A stretch of 59,314 nt of DNA, counting the filler, from Sluysia triapertura (Eukaryota): NCBI GenBank assembly GCA_046118255.1. It is 5 parts of 5 records of this genome, joined end to end, with 100 filler letters (N's around TTAATTAATTAA, not from the genome) between each part and the next. Parts side by side here need not be neighbours in the genome. Positions count along the whole stretch, not along the records: positions 34,383 to 47,298 come from JBJNIA010072943.1; 4 more parts are not named here. The stretch is one strand, 5' to 3'. Positions 40,062 through 47,298 of this stretch are shown here, piece after piece. Within the stretch, counting starts at the first letter, position 1; the number at the start of each line of letters is the position of its first letter. The notes beneath the pieces were generated by a model, which made no database searches, had not been told where the DNA came from, and saw only the letters and a list, made by a program, of their open reading frames with translations. Both the position numbers and the translations under genes were made by a program.

Positions 40062-41939
40062 ACTCGAAGCTATAGTACATTCATTTGGTAAAAAACAAAT
40101 TGCAAATCGGTCATATAACTGGTAAAATTAAAATGTGAGCGTTATCTTTCTAGATGAGTTTTGTAACTATGTTTTATTCAAAATTTCTTATTTTTGTCTG
40201 TATTTTTAGTCTGTCTAAATTTTTTATACTAAATGACCGGTGATTGGTCATCCAACCAAAATTGTTTGTCTGAGAAATAATGAATTTTATTCTGATTGGA
40301 TGACCAGTAATATGTGAGCAAATTTAATGGATTAGGAATGGTAAGTAATTAGCTATCGTCTGTTAATAGTAATGAACCATGTCAACACTAGTGATGGTAG
40401 AAACAATTTTTGTTACGTTATAGTGAATTAATTAAATTTTATGTGCATAATAATAATAAATATAATGATGATTTGATAATAATAATAATAACAATAACAA
40501 TATTGTTATTATTATTACTATCAACACTAAAAGAAAAACTCATAAATCTCTTGTTTCTTAACAAACATTAACTTCTGTTTCTTTCTTTGATTCTTAACAT
40601 ATCTTAAATCTAGAAATAGTTAAATTGAATACTATAACAATGACGACAAAAGAAACAGTGTAAAAATTATTATGGTTATTAAATTACATAAATTGCAGAA
40701 TTCTTTAAAACTGTGCACGATCTTACTTTAAATCCTTTAGATTTCTACACATATTTCAATAAATATGAATATATTTAAAACTTAAATCTCTGAATAGAGA
40801 TTAGTTTAAATGAATTTATATGTGTGATTAACGTCTCACGGTATGTTAGTAGTTCTATGTCGTATAATGAAATGGAGAATGTTAGAATGGATTCTTAGAT
40901 GGTGATTTAAGTTTTTGATTGAAAGCGACATTTGAGTATTGGAAGATCGTGAATAAGAGACTTATTGAGAAGAGTGTGTTTTGATAAATGTGAAAAGGTA
41001 AATTAAAATGCAACTATTGGTATATTTGAAAGGTTAATGTGCAATGTTTTATGTGATTTGTTTATTTATTTTTAAGTGATATTGTATTTTGTGTGTTGGT
41101 AATCATGTTATGACAAATGCTGAATTTAAGGTGTTGTAATTGTTTCGAAGGTGTACAGTGGATAATTTCAAATGTGGTTATTATTTGATTGTTGTGAATG
41201 TCGAGTTACATGTTTTTGATGAATTTGTTGATATAAATTGGTAGTATTGGATGTAAAATTGTGTGAATAAGATGATGTGTGAATATTACAATGTTAAGGG
41301 TTACTTTTATAAAATTTTAATAATATTAAGGGTTGACCACCACACCAACAATATTAAAAATAATTTTTAGCTATTTTTGGGAATTCCTCTTTGTAGTAAA
41401 TTAAAATAAGCTTCGTTTATTGTCTTAGAAATCCCCATGTTATGTGCTTTTGCTTTTTAAAATCTAGATTGTATATTTGTGGGAATTCATTTTGAAGTGT
41501 GTTTTTCGTAAAATATAAGGATTAATATCGTTAACAAATAAATTATGTTGTAGAACTGAATATTTCGTTTTTGCAAAATCATTCATTTACAGCTGATGAT
41601 TTTTATTTTATTTTATTTTATTTCGTAGATAATGGAAATGTAGATTGTAAATAAAGAATATTTTATAGATTGTATTTCCTCTTGTTATTATTAAAATATA
41701 TTGAAGTTTTTGATTTTGTAATTCAGTTATTTTTAGTAATATAATGGATATTGTTCACTGAAATATTTGTAGGAATTTTAGTCTTATTGAAATAATAGTA
41801 GGATATTTCTTGATAATTGGTATTTATTTGACGAGATAAAGTAAATCAGTTATCGTTGAGATTCAAATTTAATTTGAATTTTAAAAGTTACACCTAACTT
41901 TAATAATACTTTTAGATTTTAACACTGGTTGTAGTCCTC

Positions 41940-42425
41940 AATTTCACGGAGAAAAATGAAAAAATTACATTTAATAATTAATCAAGCAGCAAGATTAATT
42001 TTCCAAGTGGGAAGAAGATCTCGTATAACACCTTATCTTAAGGAATTACATTGGTTGCCAATAAAAACAAAATTAGAATTCAAAATCATGACAATAATTT
42101 ACAAATGTTTACATTACGGAAGTACTGGATATCTTTAGAAATAATACGAAAATTGGAAACCAAGATGAAGATTTCATTGAAGCATGATAATCTATGCAGA
42201 ATCTACAGTGATAATAAGCTAGGTGATAGATTGTATACTATTATGTTTCAAAATTATACAACCACTAATACCAGAGAATGTCAGATTACTGAAAGATTAT
42301 GAAATATTTAAGAAAAAGGCAAAGTTCTTTCTGTTTCAGAAATATTATAGTGAATGATTTACCTTAAACCCTTTTGCGTACTTACACAGTGTATATGAGC
42401 GCAATATAAATTAATATATTATTAT
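41940..42425 (+). mobile_element. L2/CR1-group LINE 3' fragment
   Basis: KLHLIINQAARLIFQVGRRSRITPYLKELHWLPIKTKLEFKI..IYKCLH, the typical post-RT LHWLP motif, followed by a 3' stem and (TAT)n tail. Confidence 0.9.
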
Positions 42426-43402
42426 TGATTTTCCAATATTTTGCATAACTAAAACGCAATCCATGGTAATGAAAACAATATCTTGATCTAAATCTATAAA
42501 ATAACAAATCTACAAATAACAATAAATTAACAATAAAAATTGAAGGCCCAACTCATCACAATTAAATCAGTTAAAAATAAATGTCAGTCCGATTACCAAA
42601 TAAATATGAGATTTGATCAGAAAAGTAATTATTTCTGCGCATTGATAGCAAAATGTAGTTCTTTATATAGTGTTTAGATAATTTCTAAAAAGTCGAGAAT
42701 ACGACTTAATTAATGTGCGTGTTTCTTAGAGTCGATTTTAATTTCCGTCTTAATACTATTTTCCAAAAATATTGAGTTTTGTGACAAACAAATTCTTATC
42801 TTTTCAGGAAAACAAAATTTTAATTTAACATAATTGTTATAACAATACTTATTGACACAATAATACATCAACTTAAATTGAATATTAAATCTAATCAATA
42901 ATAACTTTTGATACAATACTCAATATGTCATTTTCATTTGCATAACATGAATTTGATATATACTTTTACTATGCATGCTCATTATAACACATAAAAATTT
43001 AACTTTATAATGAAAAAAATTAAATAAAACCGATTATTTTATGTTATCTATGTCGACCTGTTTCGCACTATATCTCCGTGCTCATAACACTGCTAAATTT
43101 CATCATTATATTTCATTACACATGCTGCTTTTTCATATGTAAAGTTATTGATTAAAAGTGATTTTCAAACAATTTAATTTAATTAATTAATTAATTAATG
43201 TACTTATAAAATTTTTGTAAAACTTTAGAAAATGTTGATCCCTTACACACGCCTTATTCTCTAACAACGGCAATACTTCCGATAACTAAAATTAAATTAT
43301 ATTCTTTTATATTATTTTTTATTGGAATTTTTATTACATATCTTACTATACTCGAGAAAGAAAATATTTTTTGATATACCAGTATTGGAACTCATCACAC
43401 AA

Positions 43403-43459
<57 letters not shown>
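43403..43459. repeat. (ATT)n microsatellite ~130 nt upstream of the repeat-protein start codon
   Basis: Uninterrupted trinucleotide run. Confidence 0.95.
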
Positions 43460-43461
<2 letters not shown>

Positions 43462-43587
43462 TTGTTTAAATTTTATCAATTATAATTGTTCGTAATTGAC
43501 CAAATGTTCAAAATATGCACTTTCAAAATTACTAACTATTTAAACAATGAATTGTATTTGCACCACAGTTAAAATTATTATTTTAAA

Positions 43588-45862
43588 ATGTATGGTTATT
43601 TAGTTTTACTATTAACCGTGTCATTAGTATACGGTACACCGTCATAGTAATTTTTAATTTTATTAATTTGCTAAAAATTATCTACTTACAATAATAATCA
43701 AATAATTTTGTTTTTATTATTCATCTTAGTCAATACAATTCATTTTTCAATGAAAACGATATCGATACTTATGGCTGGAAAGAAGATAGTGTTGAAGAAT
43801 TGAAAAAATTATACCGAATTTTAAAAAGTGCTTATTTAAAAGGTTCAGCTTATTTGAAGAAGGTACTCGAAGATCCTGATGTTAAAGGAATACTTGATCG
43901 TACATTAATTTTTTCTTATTTTAATTTATATTTAGATTTGGGTCCTTTAACTTCGAAAGTTGCAGCTAACATTATTTTCGCTTTTTGGGATGTTGGTTTT
44001 TTTTAATATTTTTTTCTACTTTTAAACATAAGTAGATTATCTTTATTATTTTTTTATTATAGTTGGCACTAAAAATAGATGCAGCTACTAAACTTGATGA
44101 TGCTGAAACATTTGGCATTAAAGAAGATGTAAAGGGACTTTTACACCGTTTAATTGAAAAATTGAAAGATGCGTACCGCAAAGGTTCTGCGAAATTGGAA
44201 CAAATTTTAAACGATGAAGATGTTAAAGCTATTTTAGAACGTATGTTTAAAATTTATTTTTATGTTAGTTAATTTTAGATATGGATAGTTTAACTCGAAG
44301 AATTGCTGATGAAATCATTGCTCTAATGAGAAAGGTTTTTGATTTATTGCTAACTTTTTATTCTATTGTAATATGTACCTCAATAGTAGCGCTCTGTGAT
44401 TGGTGAGACGATGAGACCAATGAAATTGTTTTTATTAAACAAATATTTTTTGCTTCTATTTTCTCAAATAGAAATATTAAGTTTTTCAGATATTAAGTTT
44501 TTAGTGCTTCTTGAAATAGAAATGTTTCTATAGTAATTTCTTTGTTGATTCTATTGGATCTATTCAATATAGCATTGCTTTCGATTAAAATCATATTTTT
44601 TATTTGCTGTTTTTTCAAATAATTATCTAATAATTAATTATTTTATTTTCTCTTGGCTAGTTTTTGATTGCCTAATTTTGTGTTCAGTTAGCAAAACAAA
44701 TCGATGAAAAATTAGGTAATAAACCAGAAGGAAGTGTAGAAGTATATGGATTTCGTGAAGATAAATGGTATCCAATCAAATGGTTGGTACAAAAATTAAA
44801 AGCTGCTTTTTTGAAAGGTTTAGATGAATTAGATCGAGTTTTAAGAGACCCAGATGTCGCAGAAATAATAAACCGTTAGCTTAAATTTTATTTTAAGATT
44901 AAATTATTAATTTAATTTTATTATTAAGACATGAATAGTCTTAATAGAAGAATCGCTGAAAACTTGATCGAAAAATTCAGAGAAGTAGGAATTTTAATTA
45001 TTTTTATTTGCAATTTTTAAATAAAATATAAGTAATTTTTATTTAATTTTTTTAAAAATTTTTAGCTAGCCAAAAAAATCGACGAAGCTGCTTCAGAAAA
45101 GAAAGAAGAAACATCAGTCAGTGTATACACCTGGGATGACTCACGAGCTGCTCTACAACATTTAATAAATATTTTAAAAAATGCATTTAATAAAGGTAAA
45201 GAATATTTCGACAAAGTACTTGAAGATCCAGATGTTAAAGCAATTTTAGAACGTTGGGAAATTTATTATTTATTATTATTATTATTATTTACACATTATA
45301 GATTTAGGCCCTCTTTCAAGAAGAATAGCAGATGCAACTATTCAGAAATTGAGAGAAGTAATTTTACAAATTTCAACCAATGTCTTTAATTATGAATTTA
45401 TTTATTTTATTATAATAGATAATTTTGATTGGTTTAAAAAAATATGTTTCTTTCAGTTATTGGAACAAATCGATGAAGCAACAAAATTATCCCAAGAACC
45501 TGAATTGTCTTCTTACAATATTGCTGAAACATCAAAACATTATCTGCGAAAATTAGTCGAAATTTTAAAAGATGCTTACGAAAAAGGTTCCGAATATTTA
45601 GAAAAAGTATTAAATGATCCTGATGTAAAAGTTATTTTGGAAAGTAAGTTTTCGAGTTCATGTTAGTATACCACGTATTTTTAATAGAAAATTATTAACA
45701 ATTTTAATTAAAATTTATTTTTACAGAAATGGATTCTCTTACACGAAGATTTGCTGAATATTTGATTGAAAGTTTTAAAAAAGTATTTTATTATTTATTA
45801 TTATTATCATTATTATTATTATTAAGCTTGCCCAGAAAATTGATGAAGCTACAAAACCATAA
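43588..45862 (+). CDS. Secreted, Cys-free, five-repeat amphipathic helical protein (427 aa); exons 43588-43646, 43730-43899, 43936-43991, 44063-44240, 44279-44334, 44688-44874, 44929-44984, 45066-45252, 45302-45357, 45457-45643, 45727-45782, 45827-45862
   Basis: All 11 introns are GT-AG and the exons sum to 1284 nt with no internal stop. Signal peptide MYGYLVLLLTVSLVYG. Repeat consensus L..L...LK.AY.KG...L..VL.DPDVK.ILEH(L/M)(G/D)(P/S)L.RRIA...I......LA..IDEA. AATAAA at 45889-45894. Confidence 0.9.
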
Positions 45863-46767
45863 ATAACATTTAATAACTTTACTAAATTAATAAAGTGATT
45901 GACGAATTTTATTTGTTTTGTTATAACCAATCAATTTTTGAGTTCGAAACATTAAAATAATTAGAATTTTAATTTAAAAAGCCAGAAAAATATTATTCCA
46001 AAAGCAAATACATTTAACTCGATATGAAATATTGAGTATTTTAAGTATTAGATCATAAATTATGACATACAAACCTTATTTGTTTCATATACATCAAATC
46101 ATTATTGATATGTTCGTCAGGAAAATCAGATAATCCAGTAAATAAAACAATAATCCAAATATAATAAGAATGTATGACATCATCTTCTTAATACAACATC
46201 AAATACGTAAAAATATGAATACATACTCGTTGATAACGAACACCTTGTTCTCAGTAATTAAGTCATTCAAAAAATCATTGCATTTTAAACCACAAAAATC
46301 AATAAATCCAATCAACGTCTTAGTTATTACTCATCATCAATTAGAAAATATCACAAATGTCATTAAAAATTAATAATTTACAAACTATGTAACTGACATT
46401 TAAATTAATTTATATGATAAATAAACATGAGTTATTTTTATATAATAAATGAGTTATTATATGATTTATATACAATAATTCCTAATATAGTAACAGGTGT
46501 TGCAATGCTACCATTTGTAACAAATTATGCTAATCTTGTACGTAGTATTTATCTATTTAATTGATATTCGTTAATAATCATTAAAATATATTTGCAAATG
46601 ACTTGGAGATTCGATGTCTCAATTACTATTTTTGATACAAACATTTTAGTGTTTGCTTTTTCATAGGAAGCTAATTGAATCTGATGTTTTATTAGCTAAA
46701 AGGGTTGAGGTGCCATAGAATAATGATAGTATAATTAACTATAATAAAACAAAATTATTTGGAGTGA

Positions 46768-46798
46768 GGGGTACCGAGTTCGATTCCAGATCAGTCCA
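46768..46798 (+). repeat. 3' half of a third tRNA-derived element
   Basis: GGTACCGAGTTCGATTCCAGATCAGTCCA resembles GGTCCCGGGTTCGATCCCCGGTCAGTCCA. Confidence 0.55.
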
Positions 46799-47298
46799 TA
46801 AAATCAAAATTTACATTCGCGATTTGATAAATCGTAAACAATATTTTAGTTCCAATTTGAAGAAAAGTCTTTCCATCATTTTATTCGTATCTAGATCAAA
46901 AGCAATTTCAATTAAATATGTATCTGTGACTATTGCTTGACAAGTACCATCATAGACCAAATTTTCTACGACATAAACTTCATTTATAATAATACCTAAT
47001 TTACATTTGAATTTGAAACGCATTATGACAATTTTAGTTGTAATTTCTTCTTCTACAGTCGAATATTTAATTATAGAAGTGTGACTGAAATGAAAATACC
47101 ACATTATTCACATTCAAATGCTTTAGTAAGAACAAATACTTTTTTATATATGTATTATGTTGCGTCTTTAAAATTATTTGTTATTACAACTCAATATTAT
47201 TATCTTGATCAGCTTAAACCATAATAATTTCAATAGTCAGTATATCAAGTATAATTTTGCCGTAATCTTCTTTTATAATATCAATAACTATTATACCA

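What the first reader, a model, noticed from the sequence alone, without database searches (positions are those of the whole stretch)
43588..45862. Hidden 12-exon gene for a secreted polyprotein of five Cys-free amphipathic helical modules
Seen: hand splicing gives a clean 427-aa protein that the ORF track shows only in fragments. It has a signal peptide, a short acidic pro-region and five ~78-81-aa repeats (e.g. LHRLIEKLKDAYRKGSAKLEQILNDEDVKAILEHMDSLTRRIADEIIALMRKLAKQIDE) with a near-invariant KG..L..VL.DPDV core and no Cys. I recognise no named family. Inference: the architecture parallels nematode polyprotein allergens (ABA-1 type), insect Bla g 1 tandem lipid carriers, cestode antigen B/HLBPs and exchangeable apolipoproteins. 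It may therefore be an undescribed secreted lipid-binding or membrane-active polyprotein, possibly used at a host interface.
Basis: partly seen in the sequence, partly recalled or inferred. Interest (0 to 1): 0.85.

Follow-up and report, generated by a model that had tools for sequence, protein, structure and literature searches.

The report
Unannotated secreted five-repeat helical protein gene
The 12-exon gene is real and encodes a probably secreted, cysteine-free protein of five ~80-residue helical repeats from a family found in almost no public data, but its function (lipid carrier, surface coat or other) is untested and the "polyprotein" label is not supported for this copy.

Summary
Observation confirmed. 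It has a hydrophobic N-terminal leader, five repeats of 75-81 aa and an 11-aa start of a sixth repeat. There is no Cys and no N-glycosylation sequon. Each repeat is one 170-187-nt exon plus one 56-nt exon, with the same intron phases each time.

All ten repeat pairs give dN below dS. Codon position 2 is the most conserved. Introns do not align better than shuffled sequence. Exon GC is 31% and intron GC 17%.

No Pfam family, no solved structure and no annotated protein matches. Among 1.84 billion representative proteins plus a word search, the only relatives are three short ORF fragments from one ENA metagenome. Their similarity stops exactly at my predicted splice sites.

The family is therefore new and very narrowly distributed. 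The resemblances to ABA-1, Bla g 1, antigen B and apolipoproteins are architectural only. ABA-1's defining Cys pair and basic cleavage sites are absent. Only the metagenomic relative has a KR pair in every linker.

Function is inferred. Interest is moderate.

The parts
43537..43543 (+). TATA-like TATTTAA, 45-51 nt upstream of the ATG. Weak evidence, because the surrounding DNA is AT-rich.
43588..43640 (+). Exon 1: ATG plus a 17-18-residue hydrophobic leader, read as a putative signal peptide (h-region LVLLLTVSLV, then V-Y-G). The donor is GTCATA, the weakest splice site of the model.
   Evidence: An in-frame stop lies upstream. The only other GT in exon 1 that I tried as donor (43634) runs into a stop when read by hand.
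43730..43899 (+). Exon 2: large exon of repeat 1 (linker, helix A, KG turn, helix B, DPDV, start of helix C).
43936..43991 (+). Exon 3: 56-nt exon of repeat 1 (helix D). This is the most divergent copy.
44063..44240 (+). Exon 4: large exon of repeat 2.
44279..44334 (+). Exon 5: 56-nt exon of repeat 2.
44335..44687 (+). Intron 5, 353 nt, the only long intron. No repeat-like coding remnant was found in it.
44688..44874 (+). Exon 6: large exon of repeat 3.
44929..44984 (+). Exon 7: 56-nt exon of repeat 3.
45066..45252 (+). Exon 8: large exon of repeat 4.
45302..45357 (+). Exon 9: 56-nt exon of repeat 4.
45457..45643 (+). Exon 10: large exon of repeat 5. This is the copy folded with AlphaFold2. 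Helices are at residues 2-10, 18-43, 45-52 and 55-61, and the linker at residues 12-21 has low confidence.
45727..45782 (+). Exon 11: 56-nt exon of repeat 5.
45827..45862 (+). Exon 12: the first 11 residues of a truncated sixth repeat (L-A-Q-K-I-D-E-A-T-K-P), then TAA.
45889..45894 (+). AATAAA polyadenylation-type signal, 27 nt after the stop codon.

Best explanation
This is an intact protein-coding gene of an AT-rich eukaryote with mini-introns. It has no annotated counterpart in the protein collections searched here.

Origin: the gene arose by old tandem duplication of a two-exon unit (about 180 nt plus 56 nt).

Product: a precursor of about 49 kDa. A 16-17-residue signal peptide would send it into the secretory pathway.

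Architecture: the mature protein (about 47 kDa, pI about 5.7) has no Cys and no glycosylation sequon. It is a chain of five modules. Each module has:
- an aromatic cap, [YF]-x-[WFI]-x-E/D-D;
- helix A of about 20-26 residues, ending in A-[YF]-x-K-G;
- short helix B;
- a D-P-D-V cap that opens helix C;
- a turn;
- a long helix D, which runs into the L-A-x-x-I-D-E-A start of the next module;
- an 8-12-residue acidic or polar linker.

Processing: no basic cleavage site separates the modules, so this copy most likely works as one multi-module chain, not as a cleaved polyprotein.

Inferred mechanism (not shown): each module folds into a small amphipathic helical bundle. Its hydrophobic interior binds or shields lipids or other hydrophobic ligands outside the cell. 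The protein would then act as a multivalent carrier or lipid-associating coat.

My separate odds:
- the gene is real and coding: about 0.9;
- it is secreted: about 0.75;
- it is a single chain of helical modules: about 0.7;
- it is a hydrophobic-ligand or lipid carrier: about 0.3.
For: Gene reality:
- 12 exons and 22 canonical splice sites join into one open 425-codon frame.
- Exon sizes are the same in every repeat (56 nt five times; 187 nt three times, 178 nt and 170 nt). Intron phases are the same too: phase 1, then phase 0.
- All 10 repeat pairs have dN of 0.48-0.77 against dS of 0.83-1.54. Codon position 2 is the most conserved in all ten pairs, and position 3 the least in nine.
- Introns align no better than shuffled sequence (0.57 against 0.55). 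Exon GC is 31% and intron GC 17%.
- An in-frame stop lies upstream of the ATG, and an AATAAA lies downstream of the stop codon.

Independent comparative support:
- Three ORF fragments, P0001, P0002 and P0005, come from two contigs of one ENA metagenome. They match the large-exon profile at E = 1e-19 to 3e-21.
- P0001 and P0002 lie in tandem on the same strand, with ORF starts 332 nt apart.
- Their similarity ends exactly at my acceptor (..YFLQ | LVDKIDE) and my donor (..ILE | R..).

Helices:
- AlphaFold2 on the large exon gives helices at pLDDT 80-87 and a low-confidence linker.
- Amphipathicity is about 8 SD above shuffles.

No cleavage sites or glycosylation sequons.

New family.
Against: - No RNA evidence. 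The only public run holding the locus is genomic DNA. One of its contigs spans 45298-45780 with the introns retained.
- The signal peptide was judged by eye. Its n-region has no basic residue.
- The exon 1 donor, GTCATA, is atypical.
- No complete module could be folded. A full repeat has no contiguous reference, and the one read-through model was poor (pLDDT 61). Whether the helices form a closed bundle with a cavity is therefore unknown.
- The charge distribution on the helix faces is only weakly of the apolipoprotein 'class A' type. Mean angle from the hydrophobic centre is 108 degrees for K/R against 136 degrees for D/E on helix A, and 116 against 135 degrees on helix D.
- Nothing ties the protein to lipids experimentally.
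Confidence: 0.4

Rival explanations
1. The protein is an extracellular surface or matrix protein, structural or used for recognition, and not a carrier. The helical modules would form a coat on the body surface, egg or cuticle. This is the role described for the rotifer mate-recognition protein family: signal peptide, short spacer, head-to-tail helical repeats of 87-92 aa, and a truncated last repeat.
For: The overall layout matches. There is a signal peptide, a short N-terminal stretch, helical repeats of about 80 aa with no separate domain between them, and a final repeat cut off by the stop codon (PMC2746195, read). The protein is acidic, as MRP is.
Against: - MRP genes have no introns, and their repeats are nearly identical through concerted evolution (PMC2746195). 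Here every repeat is split by introns, and the repeats are old (dS of about 1 or more).
- The Edman N-terminal motif of MRP is absent from this protein.
- MMR-B has potential glycosylation asparagines in every repeat. This protein has no N-x-S/T sequon.
- I could not test homology, because no MRP sequence was available through the tools.
Confidence: 0.22
2. The protein is a precursor that is cut into about five helical units of roughly 9 kDa, or into amphipathic peptides. That would make it a true polyprotein, or a multi-copy precursor of membrane-active peptides.
For: All three linker regions of the metagenomic relative carry a K-R pair (KRDF, KRDF, KRNL) at the same aligned place. Four of the five repeats here keep an R-R pair at the start of helix D.
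Against: In this gene, [TVS]-[YF]-[GNT]-[IWF] stands where the relative has its K-R pair, so 0 of 5 linkers have a dibasic site. There is no R-x-K/R-R anywhere in the protein. The conserved R-R pair sits inside a predicted helix of the conserved core, not in a linker.
Confidence: 0.12
3. The protein is a hydrophilic stress-protective protein of the late-embryogenesis-abundant or apolipoprotein-like type. Its amphipathic helices would form only on membranes or on drying. On this reading it is not a folded modular protein.
For: The protein is Cys-free and rich in K, E, D, A and L. GRAVY is -0.4 to -0.5. The helices are strongly amphipathic.
Against: - Each module has conserved aromatic and aliphatic core positions and conserved turn motifs (KG, DPDV), which are typical of a folded domain.
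- No 11-mer periodicity was reported by the tandem-repeat or repeat searches.
- No Pfam LEA or apolipoprotein hit was found.
- AlphaFold2 gives confident helices without a membrane.
Confidence: 0.08
4. The locus is not expressed, or it is mis-modelled. It would then be a decaying relic whose frame happens to remain open, or some exon borders (exon 1 above all) are wrong.
For: No RNA data exist. No annotated protein matches anywhere. The exon 1 donor is weak.
Against: Twelve exons stay in frame in DNA where a stop is expected about every 11 codons. All ten repeat pairs have dN below dS. The exon borders are conserved in a relative only 40-50% identical.
Confidence: 0.07

Closest known systems
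Nematode polyprotein allergens/antigens (ABA-1 type; PMC3079579)
   Same: Both are secreted, tandemly repeated, all-helical and amphipathic, and in both a long helix links neighbouring helical sub-bundles. The metagenomic relative of this gene even has a dibasic site in every linker.
   Different: - NPA units are about 133 aa with seven helices. The units here are about 80 aa.
- NPA units carry two absolutely conserved Cys in a disulfide and a conserved Trp. This protein has no Cys.
- NPA units are separated by K/R-x-K/R-R cleavage sites. This gene has none.
- NPA repeat regions have few or no introns. Here two introns split every repeat.
- No sequence similarity was found.
Rotifer mate recognition protein family MMR-A/B (PMC2746195)
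   Same: Both have a signal peptide, a short spacer, head-to-tail alpha-helical repeats of similar size (87-92 aa there, 75-81 aa here) and a truncated last repeat. Both are acidic orphan families without Pfam matches.
   Different: MRP genes are intronless, and their repeats are nearly identical at synonymous sites. The repeats here are 36-54% identical with dS of about 1 or more. The published N-terminal motif is absent. Homology was not testable.
Insect major allergen repeat proteins (Bla g 1 type)
   Same: Both are tandem helical repeats in a secreted, Cys-poor protein, and Bla g 1 carries lipid cargo (the cargo is from my own knowledge).
   Different: The Bla g 1 repeat is about 100 aa and works as a duplex capsule of about 200 aa (own knowledge). 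No Pfam hit of any kind was found for the exons.
Exchangeable apolipoproteins and apolipophorin-III
   Same: Both have Cys-free amphipathic helices and are soluble extracellular proteins.
   Different: This protein has no Pfam or PDB profile match. It shows no 11/22-mer periodicity. Its class-A charge pattern is only weak. Its modules are separated by linkers and are not one continuous bundle.
Cestode antigen B / hydrophobic-ligand-binding proteins and mite group 5/21 allergens
   Same: These are small secreted helical proteins of 8-14 kDa that bind hydrophobic ligands, close in size to one module here (own knowledge).
   Different: They are encoded as single units in multigene families, not as internal repeats. 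No sequence or profile match was found.

Membership tests
Nematode polyprotein allergens (NPA/ABA-1) | Regularly spaced basic cleavage motif (K/R-x-K/R-R) between units (PMC3079579) | tested here: not met
   The protein has no R-x-[KR]-R. Its only R..R is RVLR, inside repeat 3. None of the five linkers has a dibasic pair.
Nematode polyprotein allergens (NPA/ABA-1) | Two absolutely conserved cysteines forming a disulfide in each unit (PMC3079579) | tested here: not met
   0 Cys in 425 residues.
Nematode polyprotein allergens (NPA/ABA-1) | Unit of about 133 aa built of seven helices in two bundles around a central helix | tested here: not met
   Units are 75-81 aa. About four helices are predicted per unit. 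No internal duplication was found within the unit (hhalign probability 1.8%).
Nematode polyprotein allergens (NPA/ABA-1) | Detectable sequence or profile similarity | tested here: not met
   Pfam hmmscan of all five large exons at E up to 10 gave only four chance-level rows, none related. The PDB profile search at E up to 10 found de novo designed helical proteins as its best matches and no NPA. These were exon-level queries, so sensitivity is somewhat reduced.
Insect allergen repeat (Bla g 1 type) | Match to the Pfam insect-allergen-repeat model; repeat of about 100 aa | tested here: not met
   No such hit. The repeat here is 75-81 aa.
Exchangeable apolipoproteins / apoLp-III | Match to the apolipoprotein Pfam models or to solved apolipoprotein chains | tested here: not met
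   none.
Exchangeable apolipoproteins / apoLp-III | Class A amphipathic helices, with K/R at the polar-nonpolar interface and D/E at the centre of the polar face | tested here: inconclusive
   On helix A the mean angle from the hydrophobic centre is 108 degrees for K/R and 136 degrees for D/E. On helix D it is 116 and 135 degrees. This is a weak tendency only.
Rotifer mate recognition protein (MMR-A/B) | Signal peptide, short spacer, head-to-tail helical repeats, last repeat truncated | tested here: met
   compared with PMC2746195.
Rotifer mate recognition protein (MMR-A/B) | Intronless gene with nearly identical repeats (concerted evolution) | tested here: not met
   The gene has 11 introns. 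Repeats are 36-54% identical and dS is 0.83-1.54.
Rotifer mate recognition protein (MMR-A/B) | Sequence homology, including the N-terminal motif D-L-I-Y/D-F/E/T-V/A-L-G/N-A-L | tested here: not met
   The motif is absent. A full-length comparison is not possible, because no MRP sequence is reachable with these tools.
Secreted protein (classical pathway) | Cleavable N-terminal signal peptide | tested here: inconclusive
   There is a hydrophobic core of about 10 residues, followed by V-Y-G, which fits the -3/-1 rule. No predictor was available. The n-region lacks a basic residue.

The most novel reading that the evidence does not exclude
This gene and its metagenomic relative found a new, phylogenetically narrow family of secreted, cysteine-free helical tandem-repeat proteins that carry lipids or other hydrophobic ligands outside the cell. 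The family would be a convergent counterpart of the nematode polyprotein allergens. It would exist in two processing states: cut at K-R sites into units of about 80 aa in the relative, and kept as a five-module chain in this genome.
Probability: 0.2. Interest if true: 0.6.

Novelty: new variant of a known kind. Interest (0 to 1): 0.4.

Why it matters
If expressed, this is a complete multi-exon gene that has no annotated counterpart in the protein collections searched. Its product has no detectable relative among about 15 billion predicted proteins, apart from three fragments in one metagenome. It would add one more independent invention of the 'secreted tandem helical module' design. In nematodes, insects and flatworms that design serves lipid transport and is often immunodominant. 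The contrast between K-R-bearing linkers in the relative and K-R-free linkers here would offer a natural test of how cleaved polyproteins and uncleaved multi-module proteins convert into one another. Without the organism's identity, expression data or a fold, this stays a well-founded gene discovery and not a functional one.

Tried and rejected
- **RNA evidence.** The look-up of sequencing runs gave one run only. Laying it showed genomic contigs with the introns retained, so the junctions could not be tested.
- **Pfam.** The five large exons gave nothing.
- **PDB sequence profile.** The best matches were de novo designed helical proteins; the weaker rows were unrelated natural proteins.
- **HMMER profile against 1.84e9 representatives.** Two true fragments were found. 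The other two hits (P0003, P0004) are low-complexity repeat proteins and I rejected them.
- **DNA of the relatives.** The DNA of the metagenomic contigs could not be fetched because the sample file is too large. Their clusters have a single member and no name.
- **JGI metagenomes.** The profile-derived peptide pattern gave 244 candidates, none confirmed. A degenerate DPDV-K/Q-x-I-L DNA pattern gave 120 loci, and local tblastn found only motif-seeded chance matches with E of 0.003 or worse.
- **Paralogues.** There is no second copy elsewhere in the 12.9-kb piece.
- **Folding a whole repeat.** The only contiguous stop-free route reads through the 36-nt intron 2 (43731-43991). It gave pLDDT 61 and is confident only over the large exon, so I did not use it for fold search.
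- **Foldseek.** The 62-aa exon model against the PDB gave no match better than E = 5.
- **MAFFT with the 18-aa exons added.** These were misaligned, and I discarded the alignment.
- **Internal duplication within a module.** Rejected.
- **Organism identification from neighbours.** The 502-aa ORF has no homologue and no Pfam domain. Other ORFs gave no Pfam hits. No tRNA or Rfam hits were found.
- **Rotifer MRP.** I considered it as an identity and rejected it as such.

Full report
**1. What is in the sequence**

The piece (34383-47298) is 26% GC and contains no N. From the raw sequence and three-frame translations I rebuilt the splice model and checked every border by script.

- Twelve exons on the + strand, from 43588 to 45862, join into a 1278-nt frame. 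That gives 425 codons plus TAA.
- All 11 introns are GT..AG. Their lengths are 89, 36, 71, 38, 353, 54, 81, 49, 99, 83 and 44 nt.
- Donor sites are loosely defined. Position +3 is T in four donors and C in one, so the weak exon 1 donor (GTCATA) is not out of character for this gene. It is still the least certain border.
- The other GT in exon 1 that I tried as donor (43634) runs into a stop, by my reading.
- An in-frame stop lies 8 codons upstream of the ATG.
- A TATTTAA lies about 50 nt upstream of the ATG. An AATAAA lies 27 nt after the stop codon.

**2. Repeat anatomy**

After a 17-residue hydrophobic leader come five units of 75, 78, 81, 81 and 81 aa, then the first 11 residues of a sixth unit.

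- Pairwise identity between units is 36-54%.
- Invariant columns are concentrated in L..L-K.A..K-G....L.D.D-V..I.
- Every unit is one large exon (170, 178, 187, 187 or 187 nt) plus one 56-nt exon. A phase-1 intron follows the large exon and a phase-0 intron follows the small one. The unit of duplication was therefore this two-exon block.
- Composition: 0 Cys, no N-x-S/T sequon, 69 K+R against 77 D+E in residues 18-425, pI about 5.7, about 47 kDa without the leader.

**3. More than chance, and coding**

- The stop-codon probability is 0.088 per codon, so one open stretch of 59-62 codons has P of about 0.003-0.004. Five occur in register.
- All ten unit pairs give dN of 0.48-0.77 against dS of 0.83-1.54.
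- Identity is highest at codon position 2 in all ten pairs and lowest at position 3 in nine of them.
- Introns at equivalent places align no better than shuffled sequence (0.57 against 0.55, and 0.55 against 0.53).
- Exon GC is 31% and intron GC 17%.
- The duplications are old. There is no sign of concerted evolution.

**4. Relatives**

- *Known families.* Pfam finds nothing. A profile of the five large exons against all PDB sequences gives de novo designed helical proteins as its best matches and nothing related.
- *Large protein collections.* HMMER with that profile read 1.84 billion representative proteins and found four hits. Two are low-complexity artefacts. Two are true: P0001 (65 aa) and P0002 (89 aa). 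A word-indexed profile search added P0005 (68 aa), with E-values of 1e-19 to 3e-21.
- *Where the fragments come from.* All three are unnamed, single-member ORF fragments from one ENA metagenome assembly. P0001 and P0002 lie on the same strand of one 1512-nt contig, with ORF starts 332 nt apart, which fits the repeat period here.
- *Exon borders.* The similarity begins right after ..Y-F-L-Q (a polypyrimidine tract plus CAG read as protein). It ends at I-L-E followed by R (C|GT read through). These are exactly my acceptor and donor. That is independent support for the exon borders in a relative only 40-50% identical.
- *Age of the repeats.* The relative's repeats differ from each other as much as they differ from mine.
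- *JGI metagenomes.* Two scans gave no relative.
- *This genome.* The piece holds no other paralogue. No full-length protein with several matching stretches exists in the library, so no annotated counterpart of the gene was found.

**5. Structure**

- Helical hydrophobic moment averages 0.38, against 0.227 +/- 0.018 for shuffles.
- AlphaFold2 on large exon 10, with the 7-row alignment, gives four elements. These are a helix at residues 2-10 (the tail of the previous unit's helix D), a low-confidence linker at 12-21, a helix at 18-43, a short helix at 45-52, and a helix starting at 55, right after D-P-D. The core has pLDDT 80-87.
- A complete unit has no contiguous reference. The only stop-free route reads through the 36-nt intron 2. 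That model was poor beyond the large exon (pLDDT 61).
- Foldseek with the exon model found nothing better than E = 5.
- I used it only in local scripts for composition, repeat alignment, dN/dS and moment calculations.

**6. Processing**

- No R-x-K/R-R occurs anywhere in the protein, and no dibasic pair occurs in any of the five linkers.
- At the aligned linker position the metagenomic relative has K-R in all three fragments (KRDF, KRDF, KRNL). This gene has [TVS]-[YF]-[GNT]-[IWF] there.
- The relative may therefore be a true cleaved polyprotein. This copy probably stays whole. This is inference.

**7. Function**

- *Shown:* an intact, selectively constrained gene for a Cys-free, acidic, modular helical protein with an N-terminal leader.
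- *Inferred:* secretion, and small amphipathic bundles that bind hydrophobic ligands. The class-A charge test was only weakly positive.
- *Rivals:* a surface or matrix role, as for the rotifer mate-recognition protein. That family shares the layout but is intronless with near-identical repeats and a different N-terminal motif (PMC2746195). The other rivals are a cleaved precursor, an LEA-like protectant, and a silent or mis-modelled locus.

**8. Comparison with known families**

ABA-1-type polyproteins are defined by units of about 133 aa with seven helices, a conserved disulfide, a conserved Trp and basic cleavage sites. They have few introns in the repeat region (PMC3079579). Each of these features that I could test is not met here. 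The Bla g 1, apolipoprotein, antigen B and mite group 5/21 families give no profile match. The finding is therefore a new family with a familiar design.

**9. Limits**

- The organism is unidentified. The neighbouring 502-aa ORF has no homologue, and no tRNA or Rfam hits were found.
- No RNA data exist.
- No eukaryotic genome collection was available for tBLASTn.
- No signal-peptide predictor was available.
- No full-module fold could be made.

**Verdict**

The 'polyprotein' label is not supported for this copy, the 'host interface' idea has no support, and lipid binding is untested. Interest is moderate.

Noticed in passing
window 35733-36195 (- strand), 41917-42385 (+ strand), 34383-34497 (+ strand, cut by the piece edge): Three copies, 83-95% alike, of an element of about 460 nt. 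Its translation ends in a reverse-transcriptase-tail-like motif (..L-I-I-N-Q-A-A-R-L-I..L-H-W-L-P-I-K..). I read it as the 3'-truncated tail of a non-LTR retrotransposon or a SINE. Two copies form an inverted pair around the 502-aa ORF region.
   Followed up: partly
window 36406-37914 (+): An uninterrupted 502-aa ORF, remarkable in 26% GC DNA. It has no Pfam domain and no homologue by the word-indexed search of 5.8 billion proteins. It lies downstream of a leucine-rich-repeat-like ORF at 35138-35395 (LRR_4, E = 0.013, below the cut-off). It may be another lineage-specific gene.
   Followed up: partly
window 43403-43459, 45263-45289, 45784-45824: (TAT/ATT)n microsatellites. There are 19 perfect units 129 nt upstream of the gene's ATG, and shorter runs inside introns 8 and 11. 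The reads tool skipped the two intronic runs as repeats.
   Followed up: no
window 40883-41882: A stretch with strong G-over-C skew (GC skew 0.33-0.60) and T-over-A skew on the + strand. It has no ORF of 50 aa or more. Unexplained.
   Followed up: no
window 43900-43935 and 45358-45456: Introns 2 (36 nt) and 9 (99 nt) are multiples of three and free of stops in frame. If retained, they would insert 12 or 33 residues without breaking the frame. This is also why ORF finders show exon pairs 2-3 and 9-10 as single ORFs.
   Followed up: partly
Donor sites of all 11 introns, window 43641-45788: The splice donors are unusually loose: position +3 is T in four and C in one (GTTGGT, GTTTTT, GTTAGC, GTTGGG, GTCATA). 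Together with the 36-99-nt introns this may help to place the organism.
   Followed up: no
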